The notes: a model not told the origin generated them from the letters alone. Shown: positions 883 through 30,351, counted from the stretch's first letter. The stretch: DNA of 64,000 nt from IMGVR_UViG_3300032236_000747:62001-126000; one strand, 5' to 3'. Program-made: numbers and translations.

Positions 883-911
883 ATATGTATTGCTATACCT
901 TTTTCACTTAT

Positions 912-1736: not shown

Positions 1737-1739
1737 ATA
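1734..1739 (+). promoter_or_regulatory. T4-like late promoter core (TAAATA) 5 nt upstream of the def ATG
   Basis: GTAAATATTTTTATG; the same hexamer precedes many structural and late genes in this window. Confidence 0.5.
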
Positions 1740-1744
1740 TTTTT

Positions 1745-2251: not shown

Positions 2252-2255
2252 AAGG

Positions 2256-4532
2256 ATGATAGAACCAAATAAAGACCTAGAAGTTATTTTTGAAAAAGCT
2301 GTAGGTATTGCTAGTAAGAATCATCACGAGTATCTTACATTAGAACATTTCTTGTATAGCCTTGTATTAGATAAAAAGTTTAATGAAGTATTAACTAACT
2401 ACGGCGCTGATTTAGACGGTCTTAAAGCGAACCTAGAAGGTTTTATTGCCAACGATTTAAAAGATATTGTAAACGCTGATCATAAAGAAAAGCCAAAGAA
2501 GACAAATACCATTGATCGTGTATTGAATCGAGCATTTACACAAGTGTTGTTTAGTGGCCGTAGTACCATTGAGCCTCTTGATTGTTTTATTAGCATGTTC
2601 TCAGAGAAGAAAAGCTACTCTGTTTACTTTATGAAAATGGCTAAGATTGACAAAGACAAGTTTGTTGATTTTATTCAGCGTGATAATAATGTTACTGAAG
2701 AAAACGAAATCAGCGAAGTTAATAACAGACAACTTGAAAAGTTGATTGTTCAGTTTTGTAACAACCTAAGTGCCAAAGCCAAAGCTAAAAAGATTGACCC
2801 TGTCATTGGTCGTGAAAAAGAAATCGAAGAACTAACATTGATCCTGGCACGCCGCCACAAATCAAACGTAATGTTGATCGGTGATCCAGGTGTAGGTAAG
2901 ACTGCTATCGCAGAAGGACTTGCTAAGAAGATAGAAGAAGGCGCGGTACCTGAGTTTATCAAAGATCACACAGTATATTCACTAGATATCAGTGCTATGT
3001 TGGCTGGATCTAAGTATCGCGGTGACTTTGAAGAACGTTTGAAGATGGTTCTTACTGCTCTTGAACGTAAGAAGAACTGCATTTTGTTTATTGACGAAGC
3101 TCACATGATGAGTGGCGCTGGTGCAGTTAGCGGATCAAGCAATGACATGAGTAATATGCTCAAACCTGCCCTAGCTAAAGGCACTATTAAAGTTATTGCT
3201 TCAACAACATGGGAAGAGTTCCGCAAGCACTTTGAAAAGGATCGTGCGTTGATGCGCAGATTCCAACGTGTTGTTGTCAATGAACCAGATGAAGCAACAG
3301 CTATTAAGATTCTCAACGGTATCAAGAAGTACTACGAGAAGCATCACAACATTAAAATCACTAAACAAGCGATTATCGACTCTGTGAAGTATAGCATAAA
3401 GTATATGAGCGATAAGAAGCTGCCAGACAAGGCCATTGACCTTATTGACTGCGCCGGTGCTAGGTTTAAAATTAACAACGAAGAAGGTGGTGTTGTTGAC
3501 CACGACGAGATTGTCTTTGAAGTTTCTAAAATCAGTGGCTTGCCATTGGATCAGATTGCCGCAAAAGATAACAAAAATCTCAAAGACCTTGAAAAGAATA
3601 TGCGTGCCAAGGTGTATGGTCAAGAAAAAGCCATTGAAAGCATTCTTGATAAGATCTTTATCGCACAGTCCGGACTTAAAGGCCTCGATAAGCCAGTTGG
3701 CAGTTTCTTGTTTGTTGGTCCAACCGGTGTTGGTAAGACAGAAGCAGCTAAACAACTAGCAAGTAATCTAAGTGTTGAGCTTGTACGTTTTGATATGAGT
3801 GAATATCAAGAGAAGCACAGCGTTGCTAAGTTTATTGGAGCTCCTCCGGGCTATGTTGGCTTTGAAGACAATGCCGGTCAGTTGATTACTAAGCTGCAAG
3901 AGCATCCTAACTGTGTATTGTTACTTGATGAAGTTGAAAAAGCTCACCCAGATGTACTCACTGTATTGTTACAGTTGATGGATAACGGCTTTGTAACTGG
4001 TAGCAACGGTAAGAAGGCAGATGGACGCAATGCTATTTTGATTATGACCAGTAACCTAGGTGCCGCTGATGCTGAAAAGAATAGTCTAGGCTTTGGTAGT
4101 TTAGAACGCGATGGCGATCCTAAAGATGCTGTTAACAAGTTCTTTGCTCCTGAGTTCCGTAACCGCTTAGATGGTATCATCAAGTTCGGTAAACTTGACC
4201 AACAAACTATGATTAAAGTTGTTAAGAAGTTCATTGACGAGCTTAACAGCCTTATCAAAGACAAAAATGTTCATGTTAAGCCTAACGCAGAGGCAGTTGA
4301 GTTCCTTATTAAGAAGGGATTCGACAGCAAGATGGGCGCACGTCCATTACAGCGTACTATTGACGAGATGATTAAGAAACCACTAAGTAAGGAAATCTTA
4401 TTTGGCAAACTAACTAACGGTGGTATTGTTGAACTAGGCGTTGATAACGAAAAGTTAACATTGAACTTCCTTGACCCATTACCAGTTAACAAGTCTAAGG
4501 TAGTCGAAGATGCACCAGCTGACAACGAATAA
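2256..4532 (+). CDS. clpA: ClpA-like Hsp100 AAA+ ATPase
   Basis: Clp N-domain, two AAA modules (GDPGVGKT/LFIDEAH; GPTGVGKT/LLLDEVEKAH), pore loops KYRG and GYVG, and a ClpP-docking LGF loop. No ClpB middle coiled coil; 758 aa. Confidence 0.92.
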   Translation: MIEPNKDLEVIFEKAVGIASKNHHEYLTLEHFLYSLVLDKKFNEVLTNYGADLDGLKANLEGFIANDLKDIVNADHKEKPKKTNTIDRVLNRAFTQVLFSGRSTIEPLDCFISMFSEKKSYSVYFMKMAKIDKDKFVDFIQRDNNVTEENEISEVNNRQLEKLIVQFCNNLSAKAKAKKIDPVIGREKEIEELTLILARRHKSNVMLIGDPGVGKTAIAEGLAKKIEEGAVPEFIKDHTVYSLDISAMLAGSKYRGDFEERLKMVLTALERKKNCILFIDEAHMMSGAGAVSGSSNDMSNMLKPALAKGTIKVIASTTWEEFRKHFEKDRALMRRFQRVVVNEPDEATAIKILNGIKKYYEKHHNIKITKQAIIDSVKYSIKYMSDKKLPDKAIDLIDCAGARFKINNEEGGVVDHDEIVFEVSKISGLPLDQIAAKDNKNLKDLEKNMRAKVYGQEKAIESILDKIFIAQSGLKGLDKPVGSFLFVGPTGVGKTEAAKQLASNLSVELVRFDMSEYQEKHSVAKFIGAPPGYVGFEDNAGQLITKLQEHPNCVLLLDEVEKAHPDVLTVLLQLMDNGFVTGSNGKKADGRNAILIMTSNLGAADAEKNSLGFGSLERDGDPKDAVNKFFAPEFRNRLDGIIKFGKLDQQTMIKVVKKFIDELNSLIKDKNVHVKPNAEAVEFLIKKGFDSKMGARPLQRTIDEMIKKPLSKEILFGKLTNGGIVELGVDNEKLTLNFLDPLPVNKSKVVEDAPADNE

Positions 4533-5130
4533 ACTATTTTACAACAAGTACAAATATAAAGTTGAGTGTTTTATCTTTGGGGCTAACTTTAGAAACTCAT
4601 TAGGTATTGTATCAACTAATAGCAAGTATAATATAGTAGAACTTAGAAAGTTTAATGCTGCTGTAGATCGATTAATGGATCTAGATATAAAAACTAGGAA
4701 CGAACGAAACACTGTTAGTTTTTTCTTTAACGATCAGTCCTTGGAACCAACAATCAAAAAAGCTATAGGAAACTGGATTGTAAGCATTACTAGTCCAGGA
4801 TCCGATGCTGAAAGCGAGTTTCTCGAAGGCAGTCGGCAGAAGATCTTGTGTAATAACTTGCCTAGAGAAGTTTATCGATACAAGGCCTACTTAAAACCCA
4901 GTACATCTGTAGCTAATAGGGCAAAGTTTTTAACATGGTCCGATAAAATAGGAGATGTCGTTTTCCATTCGGGTTCTACAAGTAGATGGTTAAGTGGTAC
5001 CAATGTGTATTACCCAGACCCTTTTATCTATGTCAAAGACGATAAAAATCTTAGTATGGTGCTGATGTTCCTAGGCAACGACTGTCGCAAAGTAGTAGAA
5101 TATATACCTAGATCAAGCATAAATACTTGA
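4510..5130 (+). CDS. Hypothetical phage protein
   Basis: 206-aa ORF packed between clpA and the next gene, with overlapping start/stop codons. Confidence 0.6.
   Translation: MHQLTTNKLFYNKYKYKVECFIFGANFRNSLGIVSTNSKYNIVELRKFNAAVDRLMDLDIKTRNERNTVSFFFNDQSLEPTIKKAIGNWIVSITSPGSDAESEFLEGSRQKILCNNLPREVYRYKAYLKPSTSVANRAKFLTWSDKIGDVVFHSGSTSRWLSGTNVYYPDPFIYVKDDKNLSMVLMFLGNDCRKVVEYIPRSSINT
5120..5125 (+). promoter_or_regulatory. Late promoter core TAAATA 4 nt upstream of ATG 5130
   Basis: CATAAATACTTGATG. Confidence 0.55.
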
Positions 5131-5555
5131 TGCCAGGATTAAGTCTACAATTTAAATTCGGAGTAGGGACAGGAACTACGTTCACCCCCTACAGTACGTC
5201 CATTCCATCTACCACTGTCGCACCCGACGGTAGTAACAACTTCTATAGTAACAAAGAAAAAGCCAACGGTTATTTCGGAAACAACGGAGGACTACATACT
5301 GTAAGTTATACAATAACTCCAAATTTTGCTGGAACATTGACAACACAGGCTACTTTGGCTACTATCCCCAGTGAAAGTGATTGGTTTAATGTAAACGGAT
5401 CTTCATTTACTTTTGTTAATGCGATTAATCCTGCTTTAACCACAACAACAAACTATGTTAACTTCAGTGGTAACTTTGTTTGGGTAAGGGCATTTGTACA
5501 ACGCAGTAACGATTATCCAAATGGCTCAGTTGAGTGGGTAAACTACAACTACTAA
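5130..5555 (+). CDS. Probable virion structural protein (beta-rich)
   Basis: Thr/Asn/Gly-rich, beta-strand-like composition similar to the tail genes, preceded by the late promoter motif. Confidence 0.5.
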   Translation: MPGLSLQFKFGVGTGTTFTPYSTSIPSTTVAPDGSNNFYSNKEKANGYFGNNGGLHTVSYTITPNFAGTLTTQATLATIPSESDWFNVNGSSFTFVNAINPALTTTTNYVNFSGNFVWVRAFVQRSNDYPNGSVEWVNYNY

Positions 5556-5559
5556 GATT

Positions 5560-5952
5560 ATGAATTTATTTGAATTTTTTAGCGTACCTTCTGTCGAAAA
5601 GCATGAGCAAGAAAATCCCACTAAACAGGACGATGATCAGCAACGTCAAAAACTTGCCAACGATCTTTATTGGTATATTTTAGACCACGATCATTTCCAC
5701 AAAAAACATGTTATGCCTATCGCACAAGGAATGGATAGGGAATATCAAAAGACAAAGAAGCTAGACAGATCAAAATATTCAGAATGTTGGATGCCATTGG
5801 TTCGCGAGGCCTGTTTAGAGTTTCACGAAAAGCATAAGATGCCAGGCAATCCTAAAAAAGTTTTTGATGAAGAGATATGTAAACATCTATGCAAGCGTTT
5901 AGCTGATAGATACATAGAGGATATCAAAAAAGGCGAATACAAGTTAGGATAA
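5560..5952 (+). CDS. Hypothetical protein
   Basis: 130-aa ORF, predicted helical, with an N-terminus MNLFEFF resembling its neighbours. Confidence 0.6.
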   Translation: MNLFEFFSVPSVEKHEQENPTKQDDDQQRQKLANDLYWYILDHDHFHKKHVMPIAQGMDREYQKTKKLDRSKYSECWMPLVREACLEFHEKHKMPGNPKKVFDEEICKHLCKRLADRYIEDIKKGEYKLG

Positions 5953-5956
5953 CGGA

Positions 5957-6946
5957 ATGTTACTGACTGAGCTATTCAATGTATTAACCAAACCAATCAA
6001 CGAAGGTGGTAACGTGTTTGATGGTAAAACAACTGATATTAAACTTGAGAATATCAAACCTACTATAAATGCTTTCTTTGCAGAAATGCAACAAGTGTTC
6101 CCTAACAAGGCAGAGATATTTCAAGAAAGCGATCAATATTTTAGTCCCCTAGGGTCTACATACAAAAAGAAATCATCGGGTGACATTGATCTAGGAATAG
6201 ATAGTCCTATGATTTTAGACAGGACTATGAGCGATGAAAGTATTGCTCAATGGGGTATTGACCCTAAGGCAGTAGCAGCTACATTTGAACTGTTGAAGAA
6301 GAGAGCACGCACCGCTACTCCCGAACAGTTACGTATGAAGGCATTCTTACTTAATCTAGTATTGTTTATCAATGCCAATGCGCCTGTAGCCTATTGTGAC
6401 GAAAAGAAAGTTACATACGGACAGATCTTTTTCTGTTATCCCCAGATCGATGAACAAGGTCAAAACTTAGGTATAGGTGTACAAATAGATTGGGACATTG
6501 GAAATCTAGAATGGTTAAAGTTTGCTTATCATTCAACGGGTTACCCAGAGGGTTCTAATGTTAAGGGACTACATCGTACACAGTTAATGTTAAGTGCTTT
6601 CCAAGTGGCAGGTTTGAGCTTTGTACACCTTAGTGGTGTCAAAGATAAACAAACTGGAGAAATGGTCGCTACAAATCCGGAAGAAGCATTACAGGTATTA
6701 AGTGAACGTCTAGGATTCCAAATAACTAGAGCAGACACCGAAGACTATTATAAACTTCACAAGGTGCTACGGGCTAACATGACACCTCAACAATACGATG
6801 TTCTAATAAACATCTATTTCAAAATTTTAGATAGTACTCGTGCAGACATTCCAGACGACCTACAGGACGAATGGCGTGCTAGAAAAGATCAGCTTGGTCT
6901 TACAGGTAAGTTCTTACCTGACAACTCAGCGTTGAAGGTAGTATAA
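5957..6946 (+). CDS. Pol-beta superfamily nucleotidyltransferase-like protein
   Basis: LGSTYKKKSSGDIDLGID matches the GS-x(n)-DxD signature; a candidate third acidic residue lies in VQIDWDIG. Confidence 0.6.
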   Translation: MLLTELFNVLTKPINEGGNVFDGKTTDIKLENIKPTINAFFAEMQQVFPNKAEIFQESDQYFSPLGSTYKKKSSGDIDLGIDSPMILDRTMSDESIAQWGIDPKAVAATFELLKKRARTATPEQLRMKAFLLNLVLFINANAPVAYCDEKKVTYGQIFFCYPQIDEQGQNLGIGVQIDWDIGNLEWLKFAYHSTGYPEGSNVKGLHRTQLMLSAFQVAGLSFVHLSGVKDKQTGEMVATNPEEALQVLSERLGFQITRADTEDYYKLHKVLRANMTPQQYDVLINIYFKILDSTRADIPDDLQDEWRARKDQLGLTGKFLPDNSALKVV

Positions 6947-9885
6947 TGAGCGGAGTAGCAGGTGCTGAACGTGTAAGGAGTCGTAATGACTTTCAACAGT
7001 TTCTTACCTCCTACAAAGACCTAATAAGTCAGTTCCCCGGCTTTGTTAGTTTACAACCTAGTGGAAGTTATAACAGTAATCCAGATAAAATGGATTTTGG
7101 CGATATAGATATTATCGTGCACATCCAAAGTACCAAAGACAAGACCACTGTTAAGAAAGAACTACAAAGTTTCTTTCATCAACAACCCGATACAACAATC
7201 GTTCCGTTTAGCTCAGAAAAGCACGCAGGTAAGCGTAGTTATAATGCGGGAGAACTTATATCAGTTCGTTATCACGACGATACACTAGGTTACAGCGCTC
7301 AAATAGACAACATAGTAGCATTAGACCAACACGAAGTTTCTTTTAAACAACACTTCTTAGATCTACCTGCCGAAAAGCAAGGACTAGTCTTAGGGCTAGT
7401 AAAAATAGCTGCCATAGAAACTGCGCCAGCAGTATTATTTAAAAAGTTAAATATTAATGCTCCCACACAAGTTGAAGCTAATCAAGAGTACGAGTTTAAT
7501 CTCTCAGGAGTTAAGCTAGAGCTAAGAAGAGTAACATACGAACCGGGAACATTTACACAAATCAATAGGCAAGTACTATGGTCTAGTCAAGATTGGAACG
7601 ATGTAGAAAAGTTACTATATCAATACGATCTTAGTCAAGACTTTGAAACATTATTAGCACAGACAAAACAAACTATTAGAAATCCGAGAAGTAACAATAG
7701 ATTACAGGGTGTGTTTAGTAGTATGATTACAGTTAAGAGCGGCGAAGTAGGCACAGAAAAAGGGGCAGGCAAAATGGCGGCGTTAGACAAAATCAAAAAA
7801 ACATTTAGTGAAAGTGACTCTAGATTATTCAATGCGTTAATGGAGGATGCTGATTCTACCTTTGTATTTGCATTTGGTCGCTTTCAACCGCCTACAGTAG
7901 GTCACGAAATACTAATTAGTCAAGTAAAGAAAGCAGCACAGCAGCATAACGCACCCTACGCAATCTTTGTTTCTAAAACTGTGGGAATAACATCTAAACC
8001 TAAACTAAGAAATCCATTAAGTATAGAACAAAAGTTTCCCTATGTACAGGCAGCATTTCCAGGAACAAATTTTGTAGCCTGCAGTGAAGATATGAAAACT
8101 GTCATTGACATTGCTAAACATATTAACCAAAAATACAAAAATATTATAATGGTAGCTGGGGAGGATAGACTAGAAGGTGATAAAGGATTTCATACTATAC
8201 TAAATCAACAAAATGGTATCGACTATAACTTCGATAGCATTGAGTTTATTCCTGTAGGCAGAGATCCGGATGCTGAAAGCGGTACTAAAGTTAGAGAAGC
8301 TGCTGCTAGCGATAACTGGGAGAGATTTAGACAAGGAATTCCTAGCACTATCAACGACAAACAAGCTCACCAGTTAATGGACGAGTTAAAACAAGGTATG
8401 GCTCCTGTGGCAAGAAGAGCACCTCAAAGAAAAGCACAAGAGGGTGGTTACGGAGACAATGGTAGCCCAGAAAGTCGCAGACAAGGTGTGGGTAATGCTA
8501 GTTACGTATCTATGCCAGGAGGCATTGGTATCAAAGAGGCAATGTTACCAAAGAGTGCGTTTGCAGGTAGTGATAAAAATAAACTAGGTCCCGCAGCTCA
8601 TGCTAAAGGCAAACAAAAAGGTCCAGTTAAGCGTGGACAGTTTGTAGGCGGCGGATGTGAAGAAAGTGTGGCGGAAGGCTTGAGAGGTACTGGCAATCCT
8701 GGTATGCCAACTCCATACGACCAAGGTCTTAATGACGCTAAAAAAGACAGAGCATATGATAATCCATATGACCAGCCAGGCGAAGAACAAGAGCATAGCC
8801 AATACAAGAAAGGTTATGAACAAGGTAAGAAGCAAGGTGTGGCGGAAGGCGAAGTGATTCCTTTTCCTAAACGTGAAGTTAAGCCACAAAATAAAAAACC
8901 AGCAGCAAAGAAAGATAACGTAAAAGCTATTAGCAAAGACCGCTATGCCAAAACTGGACCAAATACAATGCAGGGCCCGAATCTTGCTAGTATATACGAA
9001 ACATTTAATAGCAAACAAGAAGTTATTAACTACTTTTTAAGCAAAGGTAAAAGTGCCGGAGCAGGTGCAGCAGCATGGGAACGTGGATGGCGAGGCCCGA
9101 AAAAACAAGCAAAGCCAACTAAGGCTCCACAATCACAACAACGTTACTGGTGGCAGGATAAGGACGATGTAAATGAGTTTGTTACAGGTCCCAATGTTGC
9201 CACAGGCGGCGGCAAGAAAGATTACGGGCAACCAATCAGCGCACGTTACATAGGCGGTAATAAATTTGTAGTCGGTACTACTAACAATTATATACTAACT
9301 GCAACCATAGATAAGTATGGACTAGACTGGGATGACGGTTGGTATTTAGATAGCCCAGGATCAGCACACATCAGTGATGCATCTGAAGGTGATATACCAT
9401 TACCTGTATCAACAGAGCAAAGACATAGCATACACGATACAGTAACAGATTACCTTAATGATAACAATATCGAAGATCTACAAAAAGTAGCAAAACATTT
9501 TGGTCACACAGAGGATGGAAAAATGAATGAACAAGGAATGTCAGAAGCAGAAGGTACTCCAGAGGGGCTACCACATTTAACAAAAGAGTTGTTAACACAC
9601 ATTGTACAACAGGTAGGTACAGAAGGTGCACATGCCATTGTTAAGAGTTTAAAGTGGGGTGATGGTGCTGCTAAAGAACTACTACATCTAATTGTGAAAG
9701 ATTTAAAAAACAATATTAGTGTAGCAGAAAGCGTCAAACAACGCCTAGATCCTAAGTGCTGGAAAGGTTATCGCAAAGCCGGAACTAAGATGAAGGGCGG
9801 TAAACGTGTAAATAACTGTGTTCCAGTTAGTGAAGATATTGAACATTTAATGGCTGGATATATTAAAATATTATCAAGCAAATGA
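6946..9885 (+). CDS. Modular protein: N-terminal nucleotidyltransferase, HIGH-type cytidylyltransferase-like domain, and a low-complexity modular tail
   Basis: SGSYNSNPDKMDFGDIDIIV (NTase), AQIDNIV, FAFGRFQPPTVGHE (HIGH-like), IIMVAGEDR and SGTKVREAA (SxTxxR), followed by short modules separated by xxE motifs. Confidence 0.7.
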   Translation: MSGVAGAERVRSRNDFQQFLTSYKDLISQFPGFVSLQPSGSYNSNPDKMDFGDIDIIVHIQSTKDKTTVKKELQSFFHQQPDTTIVPFSSEKHAGKRSYNAGELISVRYHDDTLGYSAQIDNIVALDQHEVSFKQHFLDLPAEKQGLVLGLVKIAAIETAPAVLFKKLNINAPTQVEANQEYEFNLSGVKLELRRVTYEPGTFTQINRQVLWSSQDWNDVEKLLYQYDLSQDFETLLAQTKQTIRNPRSNNRLQGVFSSMITVKSGEVGTEKGAGKMAALDKIKKTFSESDSRLFNALMEDADSTFVFAFGRFQPPTVGHEILISQVKKAAQQHNAPYAIFVSKTVGITSKPKLRNPLSIEQKFPYVQAAFPGTNFVACSEDMKTVIDIAKHINQKYKNIIMVAGEDRLEGDKGFHTILNQQNGIDYNFDSIEFIPVGRDPDAESGTKVREAAASDNWERFRQGIPSTINDKQAHQLMDELKQGMAPVARRAPQRKAQEGGYGDNGSPESRRQGVGNASYVSMPGGIGIKEAMLPKSAFAGSDKNKLGPAAHAKGKQKGPVKRGQFVGGGCEESVAEGLRGTGNPGMPTPYDQGLNDAKKDRAYDNPYDQPGEEQEHSQYKKGYEQGKKQGVAEGEVIPFPKREVKPQNKKPAAKKDNVKAISKDRYAKTGPNTMQGPNLASIYETFNSKQEVINYFLSKGKSAGAGAAAWERGWRGPKKQAKPTKAPQSQQRYWWQDKDDVNEFVTGPNVATGGGKKDYGQPISARYIGGNKFVVGTTNNYILTATIDKYGLDWDDGWYLDSPGSAHISDASEGDIPLPVSTEQRHSIHDTVTDYLNDNNIEDLQKVAKHFGHTEDGKMNEQGMSEAEGTPEGLPHLTKELLTHIVQQVGTEGAHAIVKSLKWGDGAAKELLHLIVKDLKNNISVAESVKQRLDPKCWKGYRKAGTKMKGGKRVNNCVPVSEDIEHLMAGYIKILSSK
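8666..8850 (+). repeat. 14-bp exact direct repeat GTGTGGCGGAAGGC (8666-8679 and 8837-8850), in frame
   Basis: Two identical copies 171 nt (57 codons) apart, both encoding VAEG. Confidence 0.85.
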
Positions 9886-10145
9886 AGCAATATAGAATAA
9901 CAGGACATCAATACAGCGCATCTACAGACCCGGATTGTTTTTTAAGTCCGGATGATCCTATACATAAACTAATGCCATCTAACTGGCTAGGTGAGCTTGG
10001 CGCTGAACAACGACTAGCTGAATACATGAATCCTCCTAAAGCTAGGCCAGAATACCTAAATCCCGATAATCCCAAAACACAAATGGCCAAACAACTTGGC
10101 ATTAAACCCGGATCTCCCGCGTGGATGGAGCTATGGAAGAAGTAA
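9882..10145 (+). CDS. Hypothetical protein
   Basis: 87-aa ORF translationally coupled by an ATGA overlap. Confidence 0.55.
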   Translation: MKQYRITGHQYSASTDPDCFLSPDDPIHKLMPSNWLGELGAEQRLAEYMNPPKARPEYLNPDNPKTQMAKQLGIKPGSPAWMELWKK

Positions 10146-10147
10146 GC

Positions 10148-10153
10148 TAAATA
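10148..10153 (+). promoter_or_regulatory. Late promoter core TAAATA upstream of dps
   Basis: GCTAAATATATT in the intergenic gap, followed by an AGGA Shine-Dalgarno. Confidence 0.45.
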
Positions 10154-10176
10154 TATTATCGTATTTAGGATTACTT

Positions 10177-10617
10177 ATGGAAGACCTGCAGAAAGCAGCC
10201 AAAATCGGATTTGCTAGTGAATTCAGCTTTTATCTAAAAGCACATAACTTTCATTGGAATGTAGAAGGTGTAGATTTCTACGAATATCACAAACTATTTG
10301 AAGGTATATACACAGAAGTTTTAGATAGTATTGACGACTTTGCTGAAAAACTACGTGCCCTAGGTACCTATGTTCCTGCTAGTCACAGTGCGTTTAGCAT
10401 GTTAAGTCAAATAGCCGACGAAAATAATCTTCAGCCTAAAGAGGGCATGGTACAAGAGTTACTACAAGACAACGAAAAACTAATCAAAGTTTTGAAACTT
10501 GTCTACGATCTTGCCGAGCAAAACGGCGAACACGGATTTAGTAACTTCCTTGCAGAACGCATGGACGCACATCGTAAACACGGTTGGTTCCTGCGTGCCA
10601 GCTTAAAGGGACAATAA
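10177..10617 (+). CDS. dps: Dps/ferritin-like DNA-protecting protein
   Basis: KAHNFHWNVEG, YHKLFEGIY, DDFAEKLRALG and HRKHGWFLRA are the Dps ferroxidase-centre motifs. Start at ATG 10177 after AGGA. Confidence 0.9.
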   Translation: MEDLQKAAKIGFASEFSFYLKAHNFHWNVEGVDFYEYHKLFEGIYTEVLDSIDDFAEKLRALGTYVPASHSAFSMLSQIADENNLQPKEGMVQELLQDNEKLIKVLKLVYDLAEQNGEHGFSNFLAERMDAHRKHGWFLRASLKGQ

Positions 10618-11012
10618 TGAGAGCTAAAGAGTTTATTATCAAAGAAGCAAAAGATGCAGCTGGCGCAACTGGACATAATCCCGATCATATCAGCGCATTA
10701 CCCGATGCACACTTTTGGCCAGAGCTAGATAATAGTTCCGGCTACTTAGCCTACAGATTTGGTGTTGCCATGGCTGGTATGCCAGATCAAAAAATGAAAG
10801 TTGCCGGTCCTACAGGTCTTAAAATGGTTACCATAGGGTATACACAAGCCGAACGAGATATCCTTGATGCTACACAAAACTTAATGGGCACTCCTAAAGT
10901 AAGATTGTCTAGCGGTAAAAGTGAAGAAATGCCGGATGTATACACATTAAGTCCAGTCAACGATTGGCAGAAGGCACTTGAACAATCTACCAAAAAGAAG
11001 AAATCTAAATGA
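10617..11012 (+). CDS. Hypothetical protein with a CTS-like N-terminus (paralogue of 11009-11566)
   Basis: Starts MRAKEFIIKEA at a TAATG overlap and shares motifs with the next ORF. Confidence 0.6.
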   Translation: MRAKEFIIKEAKDAAGATGHNPDHISALPDAHFWPELDNSSGYLAYRFGVAMAGMPDQKMKVAGPTGLKMVTIGYTQAERDILDATQNLMGTPKVRLSSGKSEEMPDVYTLSPVNDWQKALEQSTKKKKSK

Positions 11013-11566
11013 GAGCCAAAGAGTTTATCGTAGAACGCACTGGACATACTCATCCAGATCATGACGCAGTGCACCAAGGATTTAGCAAACAGAGAGATCC
11101 TGGGGGATATTATCCTACCTATCATCAATATAGAACAGGCATAGCAATCGGAATGGCCGACGGTAGTGATAATCCGATAGATGTTGATCACGAAAGCTGG
11201 ATGGGGCCTTATTGGACCTTTCATCCTTATTCTGACAAAGAACATGATATGATTGATCAAGTTCGAAAAACAATACCAACCGACCACTATCAAGTAAGAC
11301 CCAGAACACCTAGTGCCGAACCTAGCGATACAAATAAAATAAGTCCAACTCCAGATTGGAATCCTAATAAAAGAGAAGTAACAAAAGTAAAAGAATCAGC
11401 AACGTCAGGAAGTTCTAATACAGGCGGAATGAGTTATAGTGCTACAAATAGTACTAACGGAAAGAAGCTTAGTCAAGTTGGTTCACTTTTTGGAGGAACC
11501 TACGGAGAGTCAGACGGCGAAGTTCCTAAGAAGAAAAAATCTAAAACAGTGAGAAGACAGTCATGA
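11009..11566 (+). CDS. Hypothetical protein with a CTS-like N-terminus (paralogue of 10617-11012)
   Basis: Starts MRAKEFIVERT. YHQYRTGIAIG aligns with YLAYRFGVAMA, and PYSDKEHDMID aligns with GYTQAERDILD. Confidence 0.6.
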   Translation: MRAKEFIVERTGHTHPDHDAVHQGFSKQRDPGGYYPTYHQYRTGIAIGMADGSDNPIDVDHESWMGPYWTFHPYSDKEHDMIDQVRKTIPTDHYQVRPRTPSAEPSDTNKISPTPDWNPNKREVTKVKESATSGSSNTGGMSYSATNSTNGKKLSQVGSLFGGTYGESDGEVPKKKKSKTVRRQS

Positions 11567-13704
11567 TCAATGAACACAAAAAAGGTTTCAAGGCTAAAAA
11601 ATACCCAATGCATACTAAACCTGCCACAATGGGAGATAGAAATCCAGTTGCTAAGAATAGCAAAATGGCAGGCAAAGCAGGCGAGCATAAGAATCCAAAA
11701 TCTGCAATAGCTCAACCACGCAAAGCTAAACATAAAAAAGCTGAGATGATGGAAACTGTTATCAGCGTCATTGAAGGGTGGAAAGAAGATGCCGAGGCAC
11801 ATAATGAGTTTTTAGCACATGCTAGAGAACAGCTCCAGGCGGTTAGTCCAACAGAAAGAAATGCACTTGCACAACGCCTTAGTAAATTAGAACAAAAACA
11901 TTTCCCAGAAATGTTTAGTGGTGGCGGACAAGTATCAGGAGATCAATATGATACTGAAACCGGTCAGGCAGTTATTGGTCCTGGCGGTATTAGCTCCAAC
12001 ATTGCTGGCATAGTACACAGTTTAAATAGACCACAGAAACCACAGGGACCAAACATTCAAAACTTACCTTTTGGTACAGTATCCAACCACGATGTTTGGA
12101 ACCATTATGCAAATCATCCCGACAACCAAGGCATTCGTCCATCCTATGCAATGTCGCCCGAGGTTGATCCAGAAGAAGCCCGTCGTAGAGAAGAACTTCG
12201 CCAGCAACAAAACGCAGCCGCATTTGAGCCTGACGAAATGGATGAGTTCTATGATTCGTTGCCACAACGTGTTAAAGACCTCAAGAAAGTTGCCAAGGAT
12301 CCTGCATCGGCTGCTAGATTTGAAGAACTATTCAATAACGAATCGGGAATGGATTGGCACATAAATGACATCATCGGTTACTATGAGTATATGATTAAGC
12401 ACGGACCAATGGATCCAGAAGGTTATGAGGACGCACGTATGACTGCTGCTGGATTAGGAGAAGGATTAGATGATATCCGAGCAAGGATGGATGCTAGACA
12501 AAATCCAAGAGTACAATCAGCACCACAAGCTGAACCATTAGGTGTTCCTAGTGTTAAAGAGTGGCAAGCTAAAATAACTAGTCGATATCCAGGTGCTAGG
12601 TTCATGCAAGCAAAAATGCCCGGCTCTCCTATCCTTGCTATGTTACAAAATTCAGAAGTTGGTCGATATGATAAAGACAAAGGTATTGTTAAACTTGGAC
12701 CACCACACGATAGTGTTCAAGAATCTAAAGTTAACGAGTTAAGCACTGATACTATGAAATCATACATCGGTAAAGCTAAGAAAGAAAAAGATTATAATCA
12801 AGCAGTTTATAAGATGCGTTCTCCTAGTATTGCTGCAGATAAAATTCATTCAGAGTATGACCCGAAACGTAAATCTAAAATCAACAAGCGCAACGCAGGT
12901 ATTGGTCAAGCTCATAGTAAGATTATCGACAAGAATAACAAAGCAGGAATAATGAAAGAAGACATCATGGGACTAGGTTCAAATGAGTTTGAACCAAAAC
13001 AACATCCAGATCCAGAAGGACAAATGGCTCGTCAAGAACTATACCGCAACGCAAAATACGGTATGGATTTATTAAAGATGATCGAGTCCAGCGACGAAAT
13101 CGAACCTTGGGTAGCAGCTAACTTAACTAATGCCGCCACATGGTTAGATAAAGTCTATCATTATCTCGACTATCGTACAAAGTTTGAACCAGAAGTAGAT
13201 CTCGGAAAAGAAGATAAAGGTATCAAAGAAAGCGAAGTAGAACCAAGCGGTGATATTGCTCGTTCAAATCTACAAGTTATTGTAGAGTATAGCATGAAAC
13301 TATTCAAAATGATCAAAGACGATACCCGTCTAGATGGTTGGGTAGCAATGAAGTTAACTAAGGCCAGCGAAGCTGTTAGTTCAAGCAAGCACTACTTAGA
13401 ACACGTATATTTTGATAAGCATTCAAATGATTTATACGAAAACAAGATGCTAAGACAGTTAGCTGAAAAACTTGCCGAAGGTGCGCAGGTAAATGAGCCA
13501 ACAACTAAGGCACCATATTACAATGACGGTGAAGCTAGCTCAAGCAAAGGAATGATCAGTAATATAGTACAACACTCAAGACGTACAGCCGGGGTCGATA
13601 CTGGATATAACTCAACTGAGAAACTGAAGAAAAATCTAAAAAGAGTAGTAGATTTTGACGCAGAAAAAACAGATAAACCTAAAAAAACATTTGGTAGAAA
13701 ATAA
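11563..13704 (+). CDS. Large modular hypothetical protein with a tandem helical repeat
   Basis: 713 aa with two related ~55-aa units near the C-terminus and multiple [ILV]xE punctuations. Confidence 0.65.
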   Translation: MINEHKKGFKAKKYPMHTKPATMGDRNPVAKNSKMAGKAGEHKNPKSAIAQPRKAKHKKAEMMETVISVIEGWKEDAEAHNEFLAHAREQLQAVSPTERNALAQRLSKLEQKHFPEMFSGGGQVSGDQYDTETGQAVIGPGGISSNIAGIVHSLNRPQKPQGPNIQNLPFGTVSNHDVWNHYANHPDNQGIRPSYAMSPEVDPEEARRREELRQQQNAAAFEPDEMDEFYDSLPQRVKDLKKVAKDPASAARFEELFNNESGMDWHINDIIGYYEYMIKHGPMDPEGYEDARMTAAGLGEGLDDIRARMDARQNPRVQSAPQAEPLGVPSVKEWQAKITSRYPGARFMQAKMPGSPILAMLQNSEVGRYDKDKGIVKLGPPHDSVQESKVNELSTDTMKSYIGKAKKEKDYNQAVYKMRSPSIAADKIHSEYDPKRKSKINKRNAGIGQAHSKIIDKNNKAGIMKEDIMGLGSNEFEPKQHPDPEGQMARQELYRNAKYGMDLLKMIESSDEIEPWVAANLTNAATWLDKVYHYLDYRTKFEPEVDLGKEDKGIKESEVEPSGDIARSNLQVIVEYSMKLFKMIKDDTRLDGWVAMKLTKASEAVSSSKHYLEHVYFDKHSNDLYENKMLRQLAEKLAEGAQVNEPTTKAPYYNDGEASSSKGMISNIVQHSRRTAGVDTGYNSTEKLKKNLKRVVDFDAEKTDKPKKTFGRK

Positions 13705-14432: not shown

Positions 14433-17102
14433 ATGAGTTACGTAGATGCAATCTGGGATCGTGACAACGATCTCGTCAAAGTAGTAGAACGTGATCCTAA
14501 AAAGGGTCGCATATATACAGATTTTCCAGCTAGATATGTTTTTTACTATCCAGACCCTAAAGGAAAATATCATTCAATCCACGGCGAAAGCCTGTCAAGA
14601 GTTGTTTGTAAGAACAACAAAGAATTCCAAAAAGAACTAAGAATACACAGCGGTGTTCGTTTATTTGAAAGCGACATCAAACCTGTGTTCCGATGTCTGG
14701 AAGAAAACTATCTAGGTAAAGATGCTCCAAAACTAAATGTAGCATTTTTCGATATTGAAGTGGACTTTGATCCCGAAAGAGGTTACGCAAGTCCAGACGA
14801 TCCATTTATGCCTATTACCGCTATCGCTGTTTACCTACAGTGGATGGAAACTATGGTATGTCTAGCAATGCCCCCAAAGACAATGACTATGGAACAGGCG
14901 CAAGAAGCAGTCAAAGAGTTTCCTAATACATATTTGTTTACCAGTGAAGCAGAAATGTTAGATACCTTTTTAAATCTTCTAGATGATGCCGATGTTATCA
15001 GTGGTTGGAACTCAGAAGGCTTCGACGTTCCGTATACCGTTAACCGTGTTACCAAGGTTCTAAGTAAAGAAGATACTCGTAGGTTCTGTTTGTGGAATCA
15101 AATGCCAAAGAAACGCGAATATGAGAAGTTCGGAAAACAAGCAGAAACATATGACTTTGTTGGACGAGTACACGTTGACAGTCTAGAGCTATATCGAAAG
15201 TACACATACGAAGAACGACACAGTTACAGACTCGATGCTATTGCCGAATACGAGCTAGGCGAACATAAGACACAATACGAAGGCACACTTGATCAGTTAT
15301 ACAACAACGACTTCCGTAAGTTTATTGAATATAACAGACAAGACTGTATGCTATTAGATAAACTAGATAAGAAGTTAAAGTTCATTGACCTTGCTTCAAC
15401 TGTTGCTCACGAAAACACAGTATTAATACAAACTACAATGGGTGCTGTAGCCGTTACAGAACAAGCTATTATTAATGAAGCACATCATAGAGGGTTTATT
15501 GTTCCTTCTAGAAAGAATCGTGATGATTTAACTGACACACAAGCTGCAGGGGCATATGTTGCTTACCCAAAGAAAGGCCTACATGACTGGGTTGGCTCGC
15601 TAGATATCAACTCATTGTATCCAAGTGTTATTCGTGCACTAAACATGGGTCCAGAAACTATCATAGGACAGTTACGTCAAGACTATACCAAGGCTGAGAT
15701 TGATGCTAAGATGGCAAAAGGTTCTTCATTTGCCGCAGCATGGGAAGGTAAGTTCGGTAGTAACGAATATGAGTTTGTTATGTCTAAGGATATTGCCAAT
15801 GATATCATCATCGACTGGGAAGGCGGCCAAACTGACGTACTAAGCGGCGCTCAGATCTACGATGTGATCTTCGAAAGCAACCAACCTTGGATGTTAAGTG
15901 CTAACGGAACTATCTTTACCTATGAAAAAGAAGGCATCATTCCTGGATTACTAAAGCGTTGGTATAGTGAGCGCAAGGAAATGCAGGCCAAACTCAAAGA
16001 AGCAATCAAAGCGGAGAATAAAATTGAAGAAGAATACTGGGACAAAAGACAACTCGTCAAGAAAATTAACCTTAATAGCCTTTATGGTGCTATTCTTAAC
16101 GCTGGGTGCCGCTTCTTCGATAATCGTATCGGACAGTCAACAACCCTCACAGGTAGACGTATTGCTCGCCATATGGCCGCAAAAGTAAATGAAGTAATCA
16201 CAGGAGATTATAATCACATAGGCAAAGCTATTATCTATGGAGATACTGACTCAGCATACTTCACCGCTTACACAAGTCTACGCAAAGAAATCGAAAAGAA
16301 GGAAATCCCTTGGAACAAGGAAAGTGTCATACAGTTATATGATTCTATAGCAGACGAAGTTAACAGCACATTCCCGCAACTAATGTTAAGTGATTTTCAT
16401 TGTCCTAAGAGTCGTGGCGAAGTTATCAAAGCAGGTCGTGAAATTGTAGGCAGTAAGGCATTGTTTATTACTAAGAAACGATATGCTGTACTATTCTATG
16501 ACAAGGAAGGTAAGCGTAAAGACAAAGATGGTAAGCCAGGTGAAATCAAAGCCATGGGACTAGATTTGAAACGCAGTGATACTCCTGAGTTTATGCAGAA
16601 CTTCTTAAGCGAAATCCTAAATAAAGTCTTAACAGGTAGTGAAGAAGCAGAGATCCTAGATATGATCAGCGAATTCCGCACAGAGTTTAAGAATAGGCCA
16701 GGCTGGGAAAAGGGTAGTCCAAAGCGTGCTAATAACATTGCAGAGTATCAATCTAAGGAAGCCAAGCAAGGTAAGGCTAATATGCCCGGACACGTTCGTG
16801 CTAGTATTAACTGGAATACACTCAAGCGTATGAACAATGACAAATACAGTCAACAGATTGTAGACGGTATGAAAGTTATTGTTTGTAAGATGAAAGATAA
16901 TCCACTTGGATATACTAGTATCGCTTATCCAGTAGACGAAATGCGTTTGCCACAATGGTTCAAGGATCTACCGTTTGATCATATGGAAATGGAAGCTACT
17001 ATTATTAACAACAAGGTCGAAAACCTTATCGGTGTACTAGAATGGGATTTATCTTCTACTACACAAAACAATACATTCGGAAGTTTATTCAGTTTTGAAT
17101 AA
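14433..17102 (+). CDS. polB: Family B DNA polymerase (T4 gp43-like)
   Basis: ExoI FFDIEVD, ExoII GWNSEGFDVPY, ExoIII YNRQD; Pol A SLDINSLYPS, Pol B KINLNSLYG, Pol C YGDTDS, and KKRYA. Confidence 0.96.
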   Translation: MSYVDAIWDRDNDLVKVVERDPKKGRIYTDFPARYVFYYPDPKGKYHSIHGESLSRVVCKNNKEFQKELRIHSGVRLFESDIKPVFRCLEENYLGKDAPKLNVAFFDIEVDFDPERGYASPDDPFMPITAIAVYLQWMETMVCLAMPPKTMTMEQAQEAVKEFPNTYLFTSEAEMLDTFLNLLDDADVISGWNSEGFDVPYTVNRVTKVLSKEDTRRFCLWNQMPKKREYEKFGKQAETYDFVGRVHVDSLELYRKYTYEERHSYRLDAIAEYELGEHKTQYEGTLDQLYNNDFRKFIEYNRQDCMLLDKLDKKLKFIDLASTVAHENTVLIQTTMGAVAVTEQAIINEAHHRGFIVPSRKNRDDLTDTQAAGAYVAYPKKGLHDWVGSLDINSLYPSVIRALNMGPETIIGQLRQDYTKAEIDAKMAKGSSFAAAWEGKFGSNEYEFVMSKDIANDIIIDWEGGQTDVLSGAQIYDVIFESNQPWMLSANGTIFTYEKEGIIPGLLKRWYSERKEMQAKLKEAIKAENKIEEEYWDKRQLVKKINLNSLYGAILNAGCRFFDNRIGQSTTLTGRRIARHMAAKVNEVITGDYNHIGKAIIYGDTDSAYFTAYTSLRKEIEKKEIPWNKESVIQLYDSIADEVNSTFPQLMLSDFHCPKSRGEVIKAGREIVGSKALFITKKRYAVLFYDKEGKRKDKDGKPGEIKAMGLDLKRSDTPEFMQNFLSEILNKVLTGSEEAEILDMISEFRTEFKNRPGWEKGSPKRANNIAEYQSKEAKQGKANMPGHVRASINWNTLKRMNNDKYSQQIVDGMKVIVCKMKDNPLGYTSIAYPVDEMRLPQWFKDLPFDHMEMEATIINNKVENLIGVLEWDLSSTTQNNTFGSLFSFE

Positions 17103-19799: not shown

Positions 19800-19824
19800 C
19801 ATAATATATGTAAATTGTTATAAT
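19796..19824 (+). promoter_or_regulatory. Perfect sigma70 consensus promoter
   Basis: TTGACA-17 nt-TATAAT. Confidence 0.85.
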
Positions 19825-30322: not shown

Positions 30323-30351
30323 TTGACAAGTTACCGAGATACGTGTATAAT
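30323..30351 (+). promoter_or_regulatory. Perfect sigma70 consensus promoter upstream of the MoxR-like ATPase
   Basis: TTGACA-17 nt-TATAAT. Confidence 0.85.

What the first reader, a model, noticed from the sequence alone, without database searches (positions are those of the whole stretch)
5560..13704. Block of putative capsid-packaged polyproteins: T4-like capsid-targeting N-termini and [ILV]xE protease punctuation
Seen: consecutive ORFs start MNLFEFF, MLLTELF..PINE|GG, MRAKEFIIKE|A, MRAKEFIVE|R and MINE|H. The long ones break into short unrelated modules separated by hydrophobic-x-Glu sites (LME|D, IKE|A, VAE|G twice, IYE|T, VNE|F, VAE|S, VSE|D, VIE|G, LGE|G, VQE|S, VNE|L, IKE|S, LYE|N, LAE|G). 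Known: T4 internal proteins carry the capsid-targeting sequence MKTYQEFIAE, and prohead protease gp21 cleaves after Glu in L/I-x-E. Inference: this ~8-kb late block encodes head cargo that is cut into many peptides and enzyme domains during maturation and injected with the DNA. That would be a polyprotein-based delivery system for host-takeover effectors.
Basis: partly seen in the sequence, partly recalled or inferred. Interest (0 to 1): 0.75.

Follow-up and report, generated by a model that had tools for sequence, protein, structure and literature searches.

The report
Tagged, cassette-built head-cargo proteins of jumbo phage

Summary
MR..EF starts 7 of 402 ORFs in this 354.7-kb phage genome, against 0.03 expected. 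The tag is kept, with synonymous codon changes, on many unrelated proteins in syntenic blocks of related phages.

The same tag sits on the small portal-adjacent head protein of cultured relatives. In Atu_ph07 that protein, gp199 (MKLTELFNPLTE), was detected in virions. The genome encodes a gp21-family (S77) prohead protease, and its capsid protein keeps T4's cleavage site (YLAE|A aligned with FLTE|A).

One specific junction, (Q/K/E)-G-V-A-E-(G/A/D/E), is. It occurs 101 times against 2.8 expected in 120 homologues.

Unexpectedly, that junction is also conserved as DNA (AAGGTGTGGCGGARG, built on rare codons) in more than 120 viral contigs, and it marks recombination breakpoints. A 513-bp cassette is 100% identical between two phages that are otherwise 67–78% identical.

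Packaging and cleavage remain inferred. Late expression is only weakly indicated. Dps and an 87-aa gene in the block are untagged.

This is a new variant of known kinds (T4 internal proteins and Alt, ejection proteins, polyvalent proteins).

The parts
5119..5125 (+). Late-type promoter-like motif ATAAATA, 5 nt before the ATG at 5130. It is the only such motif at the head of the block.
   Evidence: The same NTAAATA-N5-6-ATG arrangement precedes baseplate and other structural genes and 6 tagged genes elsewhere (tagged 6/15 against 26/387 others, Fisher p=4.8e-4).
5130..5555 (+). 141-aa ORF, first gene of the tightly packed run. It is a homologue of Atu_ph07 gp290.
   Evidence: BLASTP E=4e-15, 32% identity. 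gp290 was detected in Atu_ph07 virions (PMC6102473 Table S5). Matches phrog_14467 'virion structural protein' at E=1.8e-4.
5560..5952 (+). 130-aa protein with tag MNLFEFF. Orthologues in relatives carry the variants MLLNEFF, MRINELLE|G and MRIKELLE|G.
   Evidence: No Pfam or PHROG match.
5957..6004 (+). 16-residue N-terminal tag MLLTELFNVLTKPINE, ending in I-N-E before GGNVF.
   Evidence: The homologue in Flavobacterium phage immuto starts M-GGNVF and the tblastn match starts at residue 17. The tag is nearly identical to the start of virion-detected Atu_ph07 gp199, MKLTELFNPLTE.
5957..6946 (+). 329-aa protein with a nucleotidyltransferase-like motif (SSGDIDLGID, read by eye), tagged.
   Evidence: No Pfam or PDB sequence match.
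6946..9885 (+). 979-aa mosaic protein. It has a conserved N-terminal half (a second NTase-like motif plus a cytidylyltransferase-like domain), a hypervariable cassette region and a conserved C-terminal tail.
   Evidence: Alignment A2. 539 partial homologues of 545-1689 aa.
7852..8424 (+). Cytidylyltransferase-like (HxGH nucleotidyltransferase) domain, preceded by the tag-like RLFNALME|D. In relatives it is a separate gene starting MLLREFL or MKLRQLFE.
   Evidence: PF01467 E=1.3e-6; phrog_3041 E=9e-46.
8662..8679 (+). Cassette junction 1: E-S-V-A-E-G, encoded by GAAAGTGTGGCGGAAGGC.
8833..8850 (+). Cassette junction 2: Q-G-V-A-E-G, encoded by CAAGGTGTGGCGGAAGGC (the consensus junction).
   Evidence: The exact 16-mer occurs in at least 120 IMG/VR contigs.
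9721..9834 (+). Small Cys module VAE|SVKQRLDPKCWKGYRK..NNCVPVSE, a widespread phage cassette.
   Evidence: phrog_4359, 9737, 22379, 38880 and 727. The same module occurs in relatives and in T4-like cyanophages, where it lies between gp16 and gp17.
9835..9882 (+). Conserved C-terminal amphipathic tail DIEHLMAGYIKILSSK, following V-S-E.
   Evidence: Kept in all four homologues although the middles differ. Variants of the tail are common in the family.
9882..10145 (+). 87-aa conserved ORF, untagged.
10177..10617 (+). Dps/ferritin-like protein, untagged. It is not part of the tagged set.
   Evidence: PF00210 E=1.2e-21; phrog_3636.
10617..11012 (+). 131-aa protein with tag MRAKEFIIKE|A. In relatives the module is fused in frame behind the cytidylyltransferase (..VIRE|MRAQEFMRKQLAE|G..).
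11009..11566 (+). 185-aa protein with tag MRAKEFIVE|R, a His-rich core and a C-terminal extension after KVKE|S that is optional in the family.
   Evidence: 39 homologues; M1, R2, A3, E5 and F6 are invariant or nearly so. The AF2 model is of low confidence.
11563..13704 (+). 713-aa mosaic protein. It has a conserved basic N-terminus (MINE|HKKG..), a variable middle and a conserved C-terminal domain.
   Evidence: Alignment A3. Homologues of 537, 1145 and 1562 aa carry 1-6 QGVAE junctions.
12940..13482 (+). Conserved helical C-terminal domain of the 713-aa protein, of unknown function.
   Evidence: Nearly invariant in A3. Weak DinB-like four-helix match, TM 0.50. No Pfam match.

Best explanation
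The block, best taken as about 5130-13704, is a fast-evolving cargo locus of an uncultured T4-like jumbo myovirus. Several of its products carry a short N-terminal propeptide, M-[R/K/L]-x-x-[E/Q/D]-[F/L]-[F/I/L/V], that ends within 8-17 residues in hydrophobic-x-Glu. They are a 130-aa protein, a 329-aa NTase-like enzyme and two MRAKEFI proteins. The cytidylyltransferase also carries it in relatives, where it is a separate gene. Inferred mechanism: the tag docks the protein to the scaffolding core of the prohead, as the T4 capsid-targeting sequence does, and the phage's gp21-type (S77) prohead protease removes it after the Glu. The two long proteins (979 and 713 aa) are mosaics of exchangeable cassettes joined in frame by one junction, (Q/K/E)-G-V-A-E-(G/A/D/E). 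V-A-E fits the same protease, so the mosaics are probably cut into separate modules inside the head and delivered with the DNA. The junction is also fixed as DNA (AAGGTGTGGCGGARG). It serves as microhomology at which whole cassettes are swapped in frame between phages, which diversifies the cargo. Shown: the tags, their conservation at protein level and their presence on a virion-detected head protein of a cultured relative; the protease and the conserved capsid cleavage site; the junction's enrichment; its DNA conservation; cassette exchange bounded by junctions. Inferred: packaging, cleavage, injection and timing.
For: - Tag statistics: MR..EF 7/402 against 0.03 expected. The tag pattern is found on 34/63 distinct N-termini of mosaic homologues against 14/402 in the proteome and 3.6% at internal Met. 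Hydrophobic-x-E lies within 22 residues in 49/63 against 36% and 34%.
- The tags sit on unrelated proteins in syntenic blocks of at least 12 related contigs. Tag codons vary synonymously.
- Likeness to capsid-targeting sequences found in a T4-like phage (MKTYQEFIAE, MKTFKEFIAE) and to its gp24 and gp22 N-termini (MAKINELLRE, MLKEQLIAE).
- The portal-adjacent small head protein carries the tag: own MLLLEFL, Phosso MRYNEF, Atu_ph07 gp199 MKLTELFNPLTE. gp199 was detected in virions.
- The tag-less immuto homologue starts exactly after PINE|.
- The S77 protease is present. The capsid site YLAE|A aligns with T4-like FLTE|A, and relatives have YLKE|N and PLME|T.
- Junction: GVAE 101 observed against 2.8 expected; GVAD, GVAQ and GEAV 0. 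P1 Glu is essentially invariant while P3 and P2 vary conservatively. The Glu codon's third base varies freely.
- Fusion and fission of genes occur at tag sites.
- Tagged genes elsewhere have late-type motifs.
- The first gene of the run is a homologue of a virion protein, and the syntenic ClpA-to-polymerase region of Atu_ph07 (gp284-290) is virion-encoding.
- Cassette exchange: 513 bp are 100% identical between L003 and L014, against 67-78% elsewhere, bounded by two junctions.
Against: - There is no direct evidence of packaging or cleavage. The phage is uncultured and no RNA runs hold it.
- The block lies among replication and chaperone genes (ClpA, DnaJ, PDF, DNA polymerase), and late timing rests on one short motif.
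- Generic [ILV]xE is at background.
- The junction's edge variability (P5 codons xAA, P1' codons Gxx) and its rare codons GTG/GCG fit a DNA-level constraint, which by itself needs no protease.
- The 979-aa protein has no N-terminal tag, and Dps and the 87-aa ORF are untagged.
- The immuto homologues sit among replication genes without tags, so the enzymes themselves can act in the cytoplasm.
- An annotated NTase of Atu_ph07 (gp195; its homology to the window's proteins was not tested) is not in the virion list.
- Atu_ph07 and Phosso have no junction motif.
- Protease-peptide docking gave no answer.
Confidence: 0.6

Rival explanations
1. The proteins are cytoplasmic multidomain ('polyvalent') enzymes that are never packaged. 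The QGVAEG junction is only a tolerated linker whose DNA serves in-frame recombination. The N-terminal tag serves another purpose, for example recognition by the co-located phage ClpA/DnaJ chaperones or assembly into a cytoplasmic complex.
For: - The junction's rare codons and codon-phase pattern point to DNA-level selection, and junction-bounded exchange is shown.
- The block is flanked by DnaJ, PDF, ClpA and DNA polymerase in all relatives.
- The tag-less homologues in phage immuto lie among primase, exonuclease and nucleotidase genes.
- There is no proteomic evidence.
Against: - The tag is shared with portal-adjacent head proteins, one of them detected in virions.
- The tag resembles T4 capsid-targeting sequences and the gp24 N-terminus and ends in the protease motif.
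- The junction Glu is never Asp or Gln, yet its codon's third base is free.
- Tagged genes elsewhere carry late-type motifs.
- The neighbouring gene is a homologue of a virion protein.
Confidence: 0.25
2. The conserved N-termini are a nucleic-acid or translation feature. They would be AT-rich first codons or a downstream element needed by leaderless or nearly leaderless late mRNAs, not a protein signal.
For: Late-type motifs lie only 5-6 nt before the ATG of several tagged genes. The tag residues use AT-rich codons.
Against: - Arg, Ala, Glu and Phe codons in the tag vary synonymously.
- 26 genes with the same promoter arrangement lack the tag.
- Tagged genes at 10617 and 11009 start inside an operon with overlapping stop and start codons.
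- Tags persist internally in fusions.
- The tag boundary coincides with the start of the tag-less homologue.
Confidence: 0.05
3. Chance: hydrophobic-x-Glu is common, and the apparent punctuation and tags are pattern-seeking in ordinary sequence.
For: Generic [ILV]xE counts equal expectation. 34% of random 22-residue windows contain such a site.
Against: MR..EF is enriched more than 200-fold. GVAE is enriched 36-fold with zero controls. Both are conserved across many contigs.
Confidence: 0.05

Closest known systems
T4 internal proteins IPI-III and Alt, with the capsid-targeting sequence and gp21 processing
   Same: A short N-terminal propeptide with E-F-I-x-E is attached to unrelated, fast-evolving proteins encoded outside the main head cluster. 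A gp21-family protease is present. Processing follows hydrophobic-x-Glu. Alt precedent: an enzyme packaged and trimmed at both ends (ITE-6, LTE-619; PMC5694885).
   Different: The tag is one residue shorter and begins MR/ML rather than MKT. There are many more tagged genes (at least 15 genome-wide). Some cargo is built as long multi-cassette mosaics with a fixed internal junction, which T4 lacks. Nothing is shown biochemically here.
Ejection and inner-body proteins of phiKZ, 201phi2-1 and SPN3US
   Same: Jumbo phages package many proteins that the prohead protease cuts after Glu, often at several sites. The SPN3US paralogues gp53 and gp54 share an identical 15-residue N-terminus while the rest has diverged (PMC5694885).
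   Different: Those phages use an S80 protease with an A/S/G-x-E motif and are not T4-like in head genes. No conserved DNA-level junction or cassette exchange has been described there.
Polyvalent proteins of phages and conjugative elements (Iyer et al. 2017, PMC5512222)
   Same: Large proteins string together unrelated enzymatic or anti-defence domains, are predicted to travel with the DNA and to be processed into parts, and show variable domain content (GNAT and ParB-type domains also appear in relatives here).
   Different: Classical polyvalent proteins carry their own zincin-like peptidase for self-processing. Here no peptidase domain is found in the window proteins, and cutting would be done in trans by the prohead protease at one repeated site. 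The immuto homologue, by contrast, has HExxH motifs (read by eye).
T4 prohead-core proteins gp67, gp68, gp22 and vertex protein gp24
   Same: N-termini of the same shape (MAKINELLRE|S, MLKEQLIAE|A). The own gp67-position protein and its Phosso and Atu_ph07 homologues carry the same tag as the block's enzymes.
   Different: Those are structural or scaffold parts encoded in the head cluster. The block's proteins are enzymes and mosaics encoded elsewhere.
Viral polyproteins with a repeated protease site, and cassette loci of polymorphic toxins
   Same: One reading frame, many modules, one recurring site. Modules are swapped between lineages at conserved boundaries.
   Different: Functional analogy only. 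There is no homology, and cleavage is not demonstrated here.

Membership tests
T4-type capsid-targeting-sequence (CTS) cargo proteins | N-terminal propeptide of about 10 residues resembling MKTYQEFIAE, shared by otherwise unrelated proteins | tested here: met
   MRAKEFIVE, MRAKEFIIKE and MRYNEFVIKE; own-genome MKTFKDYLRE|A against T4-like MKTFKEFIAE. The tag sits on unrelated proteins in relatives.
T4-type capsid-targeting-sequence (CTS) cargo proteins | Propeptide ends in the L/I-x-E processing motif | tested here: met
   I-V-E, I-K-E, I-N-E, L-L-E and similar within 8-17 residues. 49/63 distinct N-termini against about 35% background.
T4-type capsid-targeting-sequence (CTS) cargo proteins | gp21-family (Peptidase S77) prohead protease and T4-type core in the same genome | tested here: met
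   PF03420 at 90 bits at genome 141584-142012. Gene order is portal, small core protein, acidic protein, protease, scaffold, capsid. The capsid cleavage site is conserved.
T4-type capsid-targeting-sequence (CTS) cargo proteins | Protein present in virions with the propeptide removed; the tag is sufficient to package a reporter | not testable with these tools
   Uncultured phage. Indirect support only: Atu_ph07 gp199, which carries the tag, is in the virion proteome.
Polyvalent proteins (Iyer et al. 2017) | Two or more unrelated effector or enzyme domains in one polypeptide, with variable architectures among relatives | tested here: met
   NTase-like motif, PF01467 and variable cassettes. GNAT in L014; MTase, ParBc, sigma-70 r4 and DUF6321 in homologues.
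Polyvalent proteins (Iyer et al. 2017) | In-cis peptidase (zincin-like MPTase) for self-processing | tested here: not met
   No peptidase family was found in the window proteins. HExxH motifs appear only in the immuto homologue, read by eye.
phiKZ-type ejection and inner-body proteins | S80 protease and A/S/G-x-E sites in a phiKZ-like head | tested here: not met
   The protease is S77 (gp21 family) and the head genes are T4-like. P3 at the junction is Val.
Protease-processed polyprotein (functional class) | One recurring, conserved site between modules that matches the cognate protease | tested here: met
   GVAE 101 against 2.8 expected, Glu invariant. Sites lie at cassette borders. Capsid site L-A-E|A.
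Protease-processed polyprotein (functional class) | Demonstrated cleavage into mature products | not testable with these tools
   Docking of the protease with a junction peptide gave no answer.
Dps/ferritin-like (10177-10617 only) | Ferritin-like four-helix domain | tested here: met
   PF00210 E=1.2e-21.

The most novel reading that the evidence does not exclude
A plug-and-play cargo system. A 15-nt in-frame junction (AAGGTGTGGCGGARG) acts both as the cutting site of the prohead protease (V-A-E|G) and as the recombination microhomology at which effector cassettes are swapped between co-infecting jumbo phages. Any new combination is then automatically packaged through a T4-like tag, cut apart and injected.
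Probability: 0.4. Interest if true: 0.85.

Novelty: new variant of a known kind. Interest (0 to 1): 0.72.

Why it matters
If the reading is right, a large and widespread group of freshwater jumbo phages delivers a changing set of enzymes into the host at the moment of infection. Such enzymes include nucleotidyltransferases, with acetyltransferase-, ParB- and deaminase-type modules in relatives.

The tag would predict from sequence alone which genes of these phages are head cargo. The junction would give a rule for where the mosaics are cut and where they recombine.

This also extends T4's capsid-targeting principle, which is used as a protein-delivery tool, to a second and much larger natural repertoire. 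It offers a concrete example of evolvability built into a coding sequence, where one short sequence is read both as protein and as DNA.

Tried and rejected
- **Strict T4 late promoter TATAAATA**: only 13 copies genome-wide and none in the block. The looser NTAAATA motif is informative but short.
- **Generic sigma-70 and terminator scans of the block**: at chance level.
- **Nucleotide and protein searches of GenBank phages** with the block, the 185-aa protein and the 713-aa protein: no match.
- **Pfam on ten isolated cassettes**: nothing credible. A PARP-like LWHGSR segment and a ParB-like segment that I saw by eye in relatives were not confirmed and are not claimed.
- **PDB sequence searches** of the two NTase-like proteins: empty.
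- **AF2 of the 185-aa family**: low confidence (pLDDT 53), so unusable beyond showing no confident fold for the tag or the C-terminal extension.
- **Protease plus junction-peptide complex**: 'no answer'.
- **Sequencing runs**: only the source DNA run, no RNA.
- **An apparent counter-example**: contig G004 has junctions and tags but no protease, capsid or portal. Its end falls exactly where the head module begins, so the genes are cut off with the contig end rather than shown to be absent.
- **The 17-mer in bacterial genomes**: single scattered hits in unrelated high-GC taxa, consistent with chance.
- **Atu_ph07**: no MR..EF enrichment. Atu_ph07 and Phosso have no junction motif.

Full report
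**Context.** The window is bases 62,001-126,000 of a single 354,680-bp viral contig. Its DNA polymerase is 44-50% identical to those of Sinorhizobium phage Phosso, Agrobacterium phage Atu_ph07 and Rak2-like coliphages. The window also holds T4-type baseplate genes and a 4,579-aa ORF. The phage is therefore an uncultured T4-related jumbo myovirus.

The finding's block (5560-13704, + strand) lies between DnaJ (885-1736), peptide deformylase (1745-2251) and a ClpA-like ATPase (2256-4532) on one side and the DNA polymerase (14433-17102) on the other. Only two products have family matches. One is a cytidylyltransferase-like domain inside the 979-aa protein. The other is a Dps/ferritin-like protein at 10177-10617.

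**Checking the observation.** All quoted N-termini and all listed internal sites exist.

The 979-aa protein has 9 sites against 10.2 expected from its composition, and the 713-aa protein has 12 against 8.8.

The N-termini are another matter. MR..EF starts 7 of 402 ORFs genome-wide against 0.03 expected, and M...EF starts 10 against 0.86. Further copies lie outside the window, at genome 57368(-), 258376, 259812, 265181 and 299981. One ORF, at genome 308317, starts MKTFKDYLRE|A.

**Relatives.** Twelve-plus IMG/VR contigs keep the same synteny: DnaJ, PDF, ClpA, the block, then polymerase. Nearly every enzyme or small protein in their blocks starts with a variant of the tag, such as MRAKEFI, MRINELLE|G, MLLRELF..INE|GGN, MLLREFL, MKLRQLFE or MKILEFI.

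- The tag's codons vary synonymously (AGA/CGA/CGG/CGC, GCA/GCT/GCC, GAA/GAG, TTT/TTC), so the protein sequence is what is selected.
- In the 185-aa family, M1, R2, A3, E5 and F6 are the best-conserved positions.
- Among 63 distinct N-termini of mosaic homologues, 34 fit the tag pattern, against 3.5% of this phage's ORFs. In 49 of the 63 a hydrophobic-x-Glu lies within 22 residues, against about 35% background.

**Link to the head.**

- The genome encodes a Peptidase_S77 (gp21-family) protease. It is 33.6% identical to T-even gp21 and 58.6% to Phosso's.
- The protease sits in a T4-ordered head module: portal, an 87-aa protein, an acidic protein, protease, scaffold, capsid.
- The capsid protein's KYLAE|AATAG aligns with SFLTE|AEIGG of a T4-like gp23. 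Relatives show YLKE|N and PLME|T at the same place.
- A T4-like phage scanned here has four capsid-targeting genes (MKTYQEFIAE, MKTYQEFITE, MKTYKEFIKE, MKTFKEFIAE). Its gp24 and gp22 begin MAKINELLRE|S and MLKEQLIAE|A. These are the same shape as the tags here.
- According to the T4 literature, residues 4 and 7 of the targeting sequence direct packaging and residues 8 and 10 direct processing (PMC9026906).
- The small protein encoded right after the portal (the T4 gp67 position) is homologous in this phage, Phosso and Atu_ph07. It starts MLLLEFLYFDQE, MRYNEFSKE and MKLTELFNPLTE respectively.
- The Atu_ph07 protein, gp199, is in the published virion proteome (9.0 kDa, 27% coverage; PMC6102473 Table S5). 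Its first twelve residues are almost those of the window's 329-aa enzyme (MLLTELFNVLTK).
- The homologue of that enzyme in Flavobacterium phage immuto, which lacks the tag, starts M-GGNVF. That is exactly the residue after the proposed cut PINE|GGNVF. The tag is therefore a separable add-on whose boundary is the protease motif.

**The mosaics.** The 979-aa family has a conserved 500-residue N-terminal half, a hypervariable middle and a conserved C-terminal tail that follows V-S-E. The 713-aa family has a conserved basic N-terminus (MINE|H), a variable middle and a nearly invariant helical C-terminal domain.

- Searching the second half of the 979-aa protein found 539 proteins of 545-1689 aa, each matching only 10-31% of the query. 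They carry assorted extra Pfam domains, so cassettes are shuffled on a large scale.
- Gene borders in one phage are internal tag-plus-site positions in another. The cytidylyltransferase is separate (MLLREFL.., MKLRQLFE..) or fused (..RLFNALME|D..). The MRAxEF module is fused behind it as ..VIRE|MRAQEFMRKQLAE|G...

**The junction.** Between cassettes one motif recurs: (Q/K/E)-G-V-A-E-(G/A/D/E).

- In the 120 best homologues (114,767 residues), GVAE occurs 101 times against 2.8 expected. GVAD, GVAQ and GEAV occur 0 times.
- Glu at P1 and Gly at P4 are essentially invariant. P3 varies to Met, Leu or Ile, and P2 to Ser or Thr.
- The window's 979-aa protein has two copies (8662-8679, 8833-8850) plus VAE|S. 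The 713-aa protein has LAE|G.
- V-A-E followed by a small residue matches the phage's own capsid site (L-A-E|A) and the I-A-E|A pattern seen at the end of T4-like targeting sequences and at the gp22 N-terminus.

**An unexpected layer.** The junction is also conserved as DNA.

- Nearly all copies read CAA GGT GTG GCG GAA GGC, although GTG and GCG make up only 10% and 8% of Val and Ala codons in this genome. The flanks are unrelated.
- The 16-mer occurs in at least 120 IMG/VR contigs. Of 175 copies, 165 lie in long open frames in the GVAE phase, with a median open length of 556 codons against 22 in the other phases.
- Junctions in the same ORFs that were not selected by the exact pattern still use GTG and GCG about 77% of the time. 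The Glu codon shows the ordinary GAA/GAG ratio.
- The variable edges follow codon phase: xAA before the core and Gxx after it.
- Two phages whose shared genes are 67-78% identical share a 513-bp segment that is 100% identical and bounded exactly by two junctions (L003:10604-11116 = L014:6925-7437). This is a recent cassette transfer with breakpoints at the junction.
- Atu_ph07 and Phosso have no copy. Related contigs have 1-5 copies each, always on one strand within a contig.

The junction is thus under two constraints: a protein-level need for V-A-E, and a DNA-level role as in-frame recombination microhomology. The second role alone could explain much of its conservation, which is why cleavage remains an inference.

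**Timing and virion association.**

- A motif NTAAATA, close to T4's late TATAAATA, is the most enriched upstream 7-mer. It lies 5-6 nt before the ATG of baseplate and other genes, and of 6 of 15 tagged genes against 26 of 387 others (p=4.8e-4).
- Within the block it occurs only at 5119, before the 141-aa gene that opens the tightly packed run.
- That gene is a homologue of Atu_ph07 gp290. gp290, like gp284-289 in the syntenic ClpA-to-polymerase interval, was detected in virions.
- No sigma-70-like early promoter of the genome's strong type lies at the start of, or within, the block.

This favours late expression but does not prove it.

**Weighing.** The tags are real, protein-level, and shared with bona fide head proteins. 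The protease and its site preference are in place, and the mosaics have a specific recurring site. I put the packaged-and-processed cargo reading at about 0.6.

The main rival, at about 0.25, is that these are cytoplasmic polyvalent enzymes whose junction is only a recombination linker. It draws on the DNA-level signature, the replication-gene neighbourhood and the tag-less cytoplasmic-looking homologues in immuto.

A translation-signal reading of the tags is contradicted by synonymous variation and by internal tags.

**Comparison with what is known.** This works like T4's internal proteins and Alt: a targeting propeptide, gp21 processing, and a polymorphic locus. It also works like the ejection proteins of phiKZ-type phages, where SPN3US gp53 and gp54 share an identical N-terminus (PMC5694885). 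The mosaics match the concept of polyvalent proteins (PMC5512222), but they lack the in-cis peptidase that typifies those.

Three things are new:

- the scale of tagging in a T4-related jumbo phage clade;
- mosaics with a single repeated trans-protease-type site;
- the fixation of that site as a DNA junction at which cassettes are exchanged.

I therefore class it as a new variant of a known kind.

**What led nowhere.** Structure prediction of the 185-aa family was of low confidence. Protease-peptide docking gave no answer. Pfam on isolated cassettes was empty. No RNA data exist. Contig G004 looked like a counter-example, with junctions but no protease, but it is cut off at the head module.

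Noticed in passing
window 1733-1744, 5119-5129, 43004-43015, 60941-60951 and about 28 more sites genome-wide: The late-type motif NTAAATA sits only 5-6 nt before the ATG of about 32 genes, including baseplate wedge genes and the peptide deformylase gene. This implies leaderless or nearly leaderless late mRNAs.
   Followed up: partly
window 19796-19824 and 30323-30351; 44 sites genome-wide: Strong sigma-70-like early promoters TTGACA-N17-(TG)TATAAT. Many outside the window share the spacer core GGTAAAACC, which suggests an operator or a phage-specific promoter class.
   Followed up: no
window 42990-56729 (-): Giant 4,579-aa ORF with no Pfam match at all, lying next to baseplate genes.
   Followed up: partly
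window 34896-42332 (-): Four tandem paralogous 540-661-aa ORFs share an N-terminal phrog_14394 'virion structural protein' module and have differing C-termini. They look like a fibre or receptor-binding cassette array.
   Followed up: no
window 885-4532 (+): A DnaJ, peptide deformylase and ClpA-like ATPase trio is conserved directly upstream of the block in all relatives. DnaJ and ClpA also sit there in Atu_ph07.
   Followed up: partly
window 10177-10617 (+): A phage-encoded Dps/ferritin-like protein lies inside the block, untagged. It is conserved in relatives next to an 87-aa ORF.
   Followed up: no
L006:4866-6740, L008:5597-6781, L010:5060-6916: In relatives the block holds DUF6267 proteins with a KWDG motif that looks like the adenylation lysine of ATP-dependent ligases (read by eye). 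Together with the NTase and adenylyltransferase-like domains, this hints at nucleic-acid repair or modification cargo.
   Followed up: no
L288:5908-8631 (Flavobacterium phage immuto): The 907-aa homologue of the 979-aa protein carries HEMIH and HEIEH motifs (zincin-like, read by eye) in place of the junction-bounded cassettes. It looks like a classical self-processing polyvalent protein.
   Followed up: no
L148:1478-6813 (Synechococcus phage ACG-2014f): The small Cys cassettes (CWKGY..C and DUF6321) found in the mosaics also occur in Lys-rich hypothetical proteins between gp16 and gp17 of T4-like cyanophages, inside the late structural cluster. 525 phage records hold them.
   Followed up: partly
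G004 (IMG/VR contig of 342,865 bp): CheckV rates this contig 99% complete, yet it ends exactly where the head module should begin and lacks about 70 kb of structural genes present in the window's genome.
   Followed up: yes
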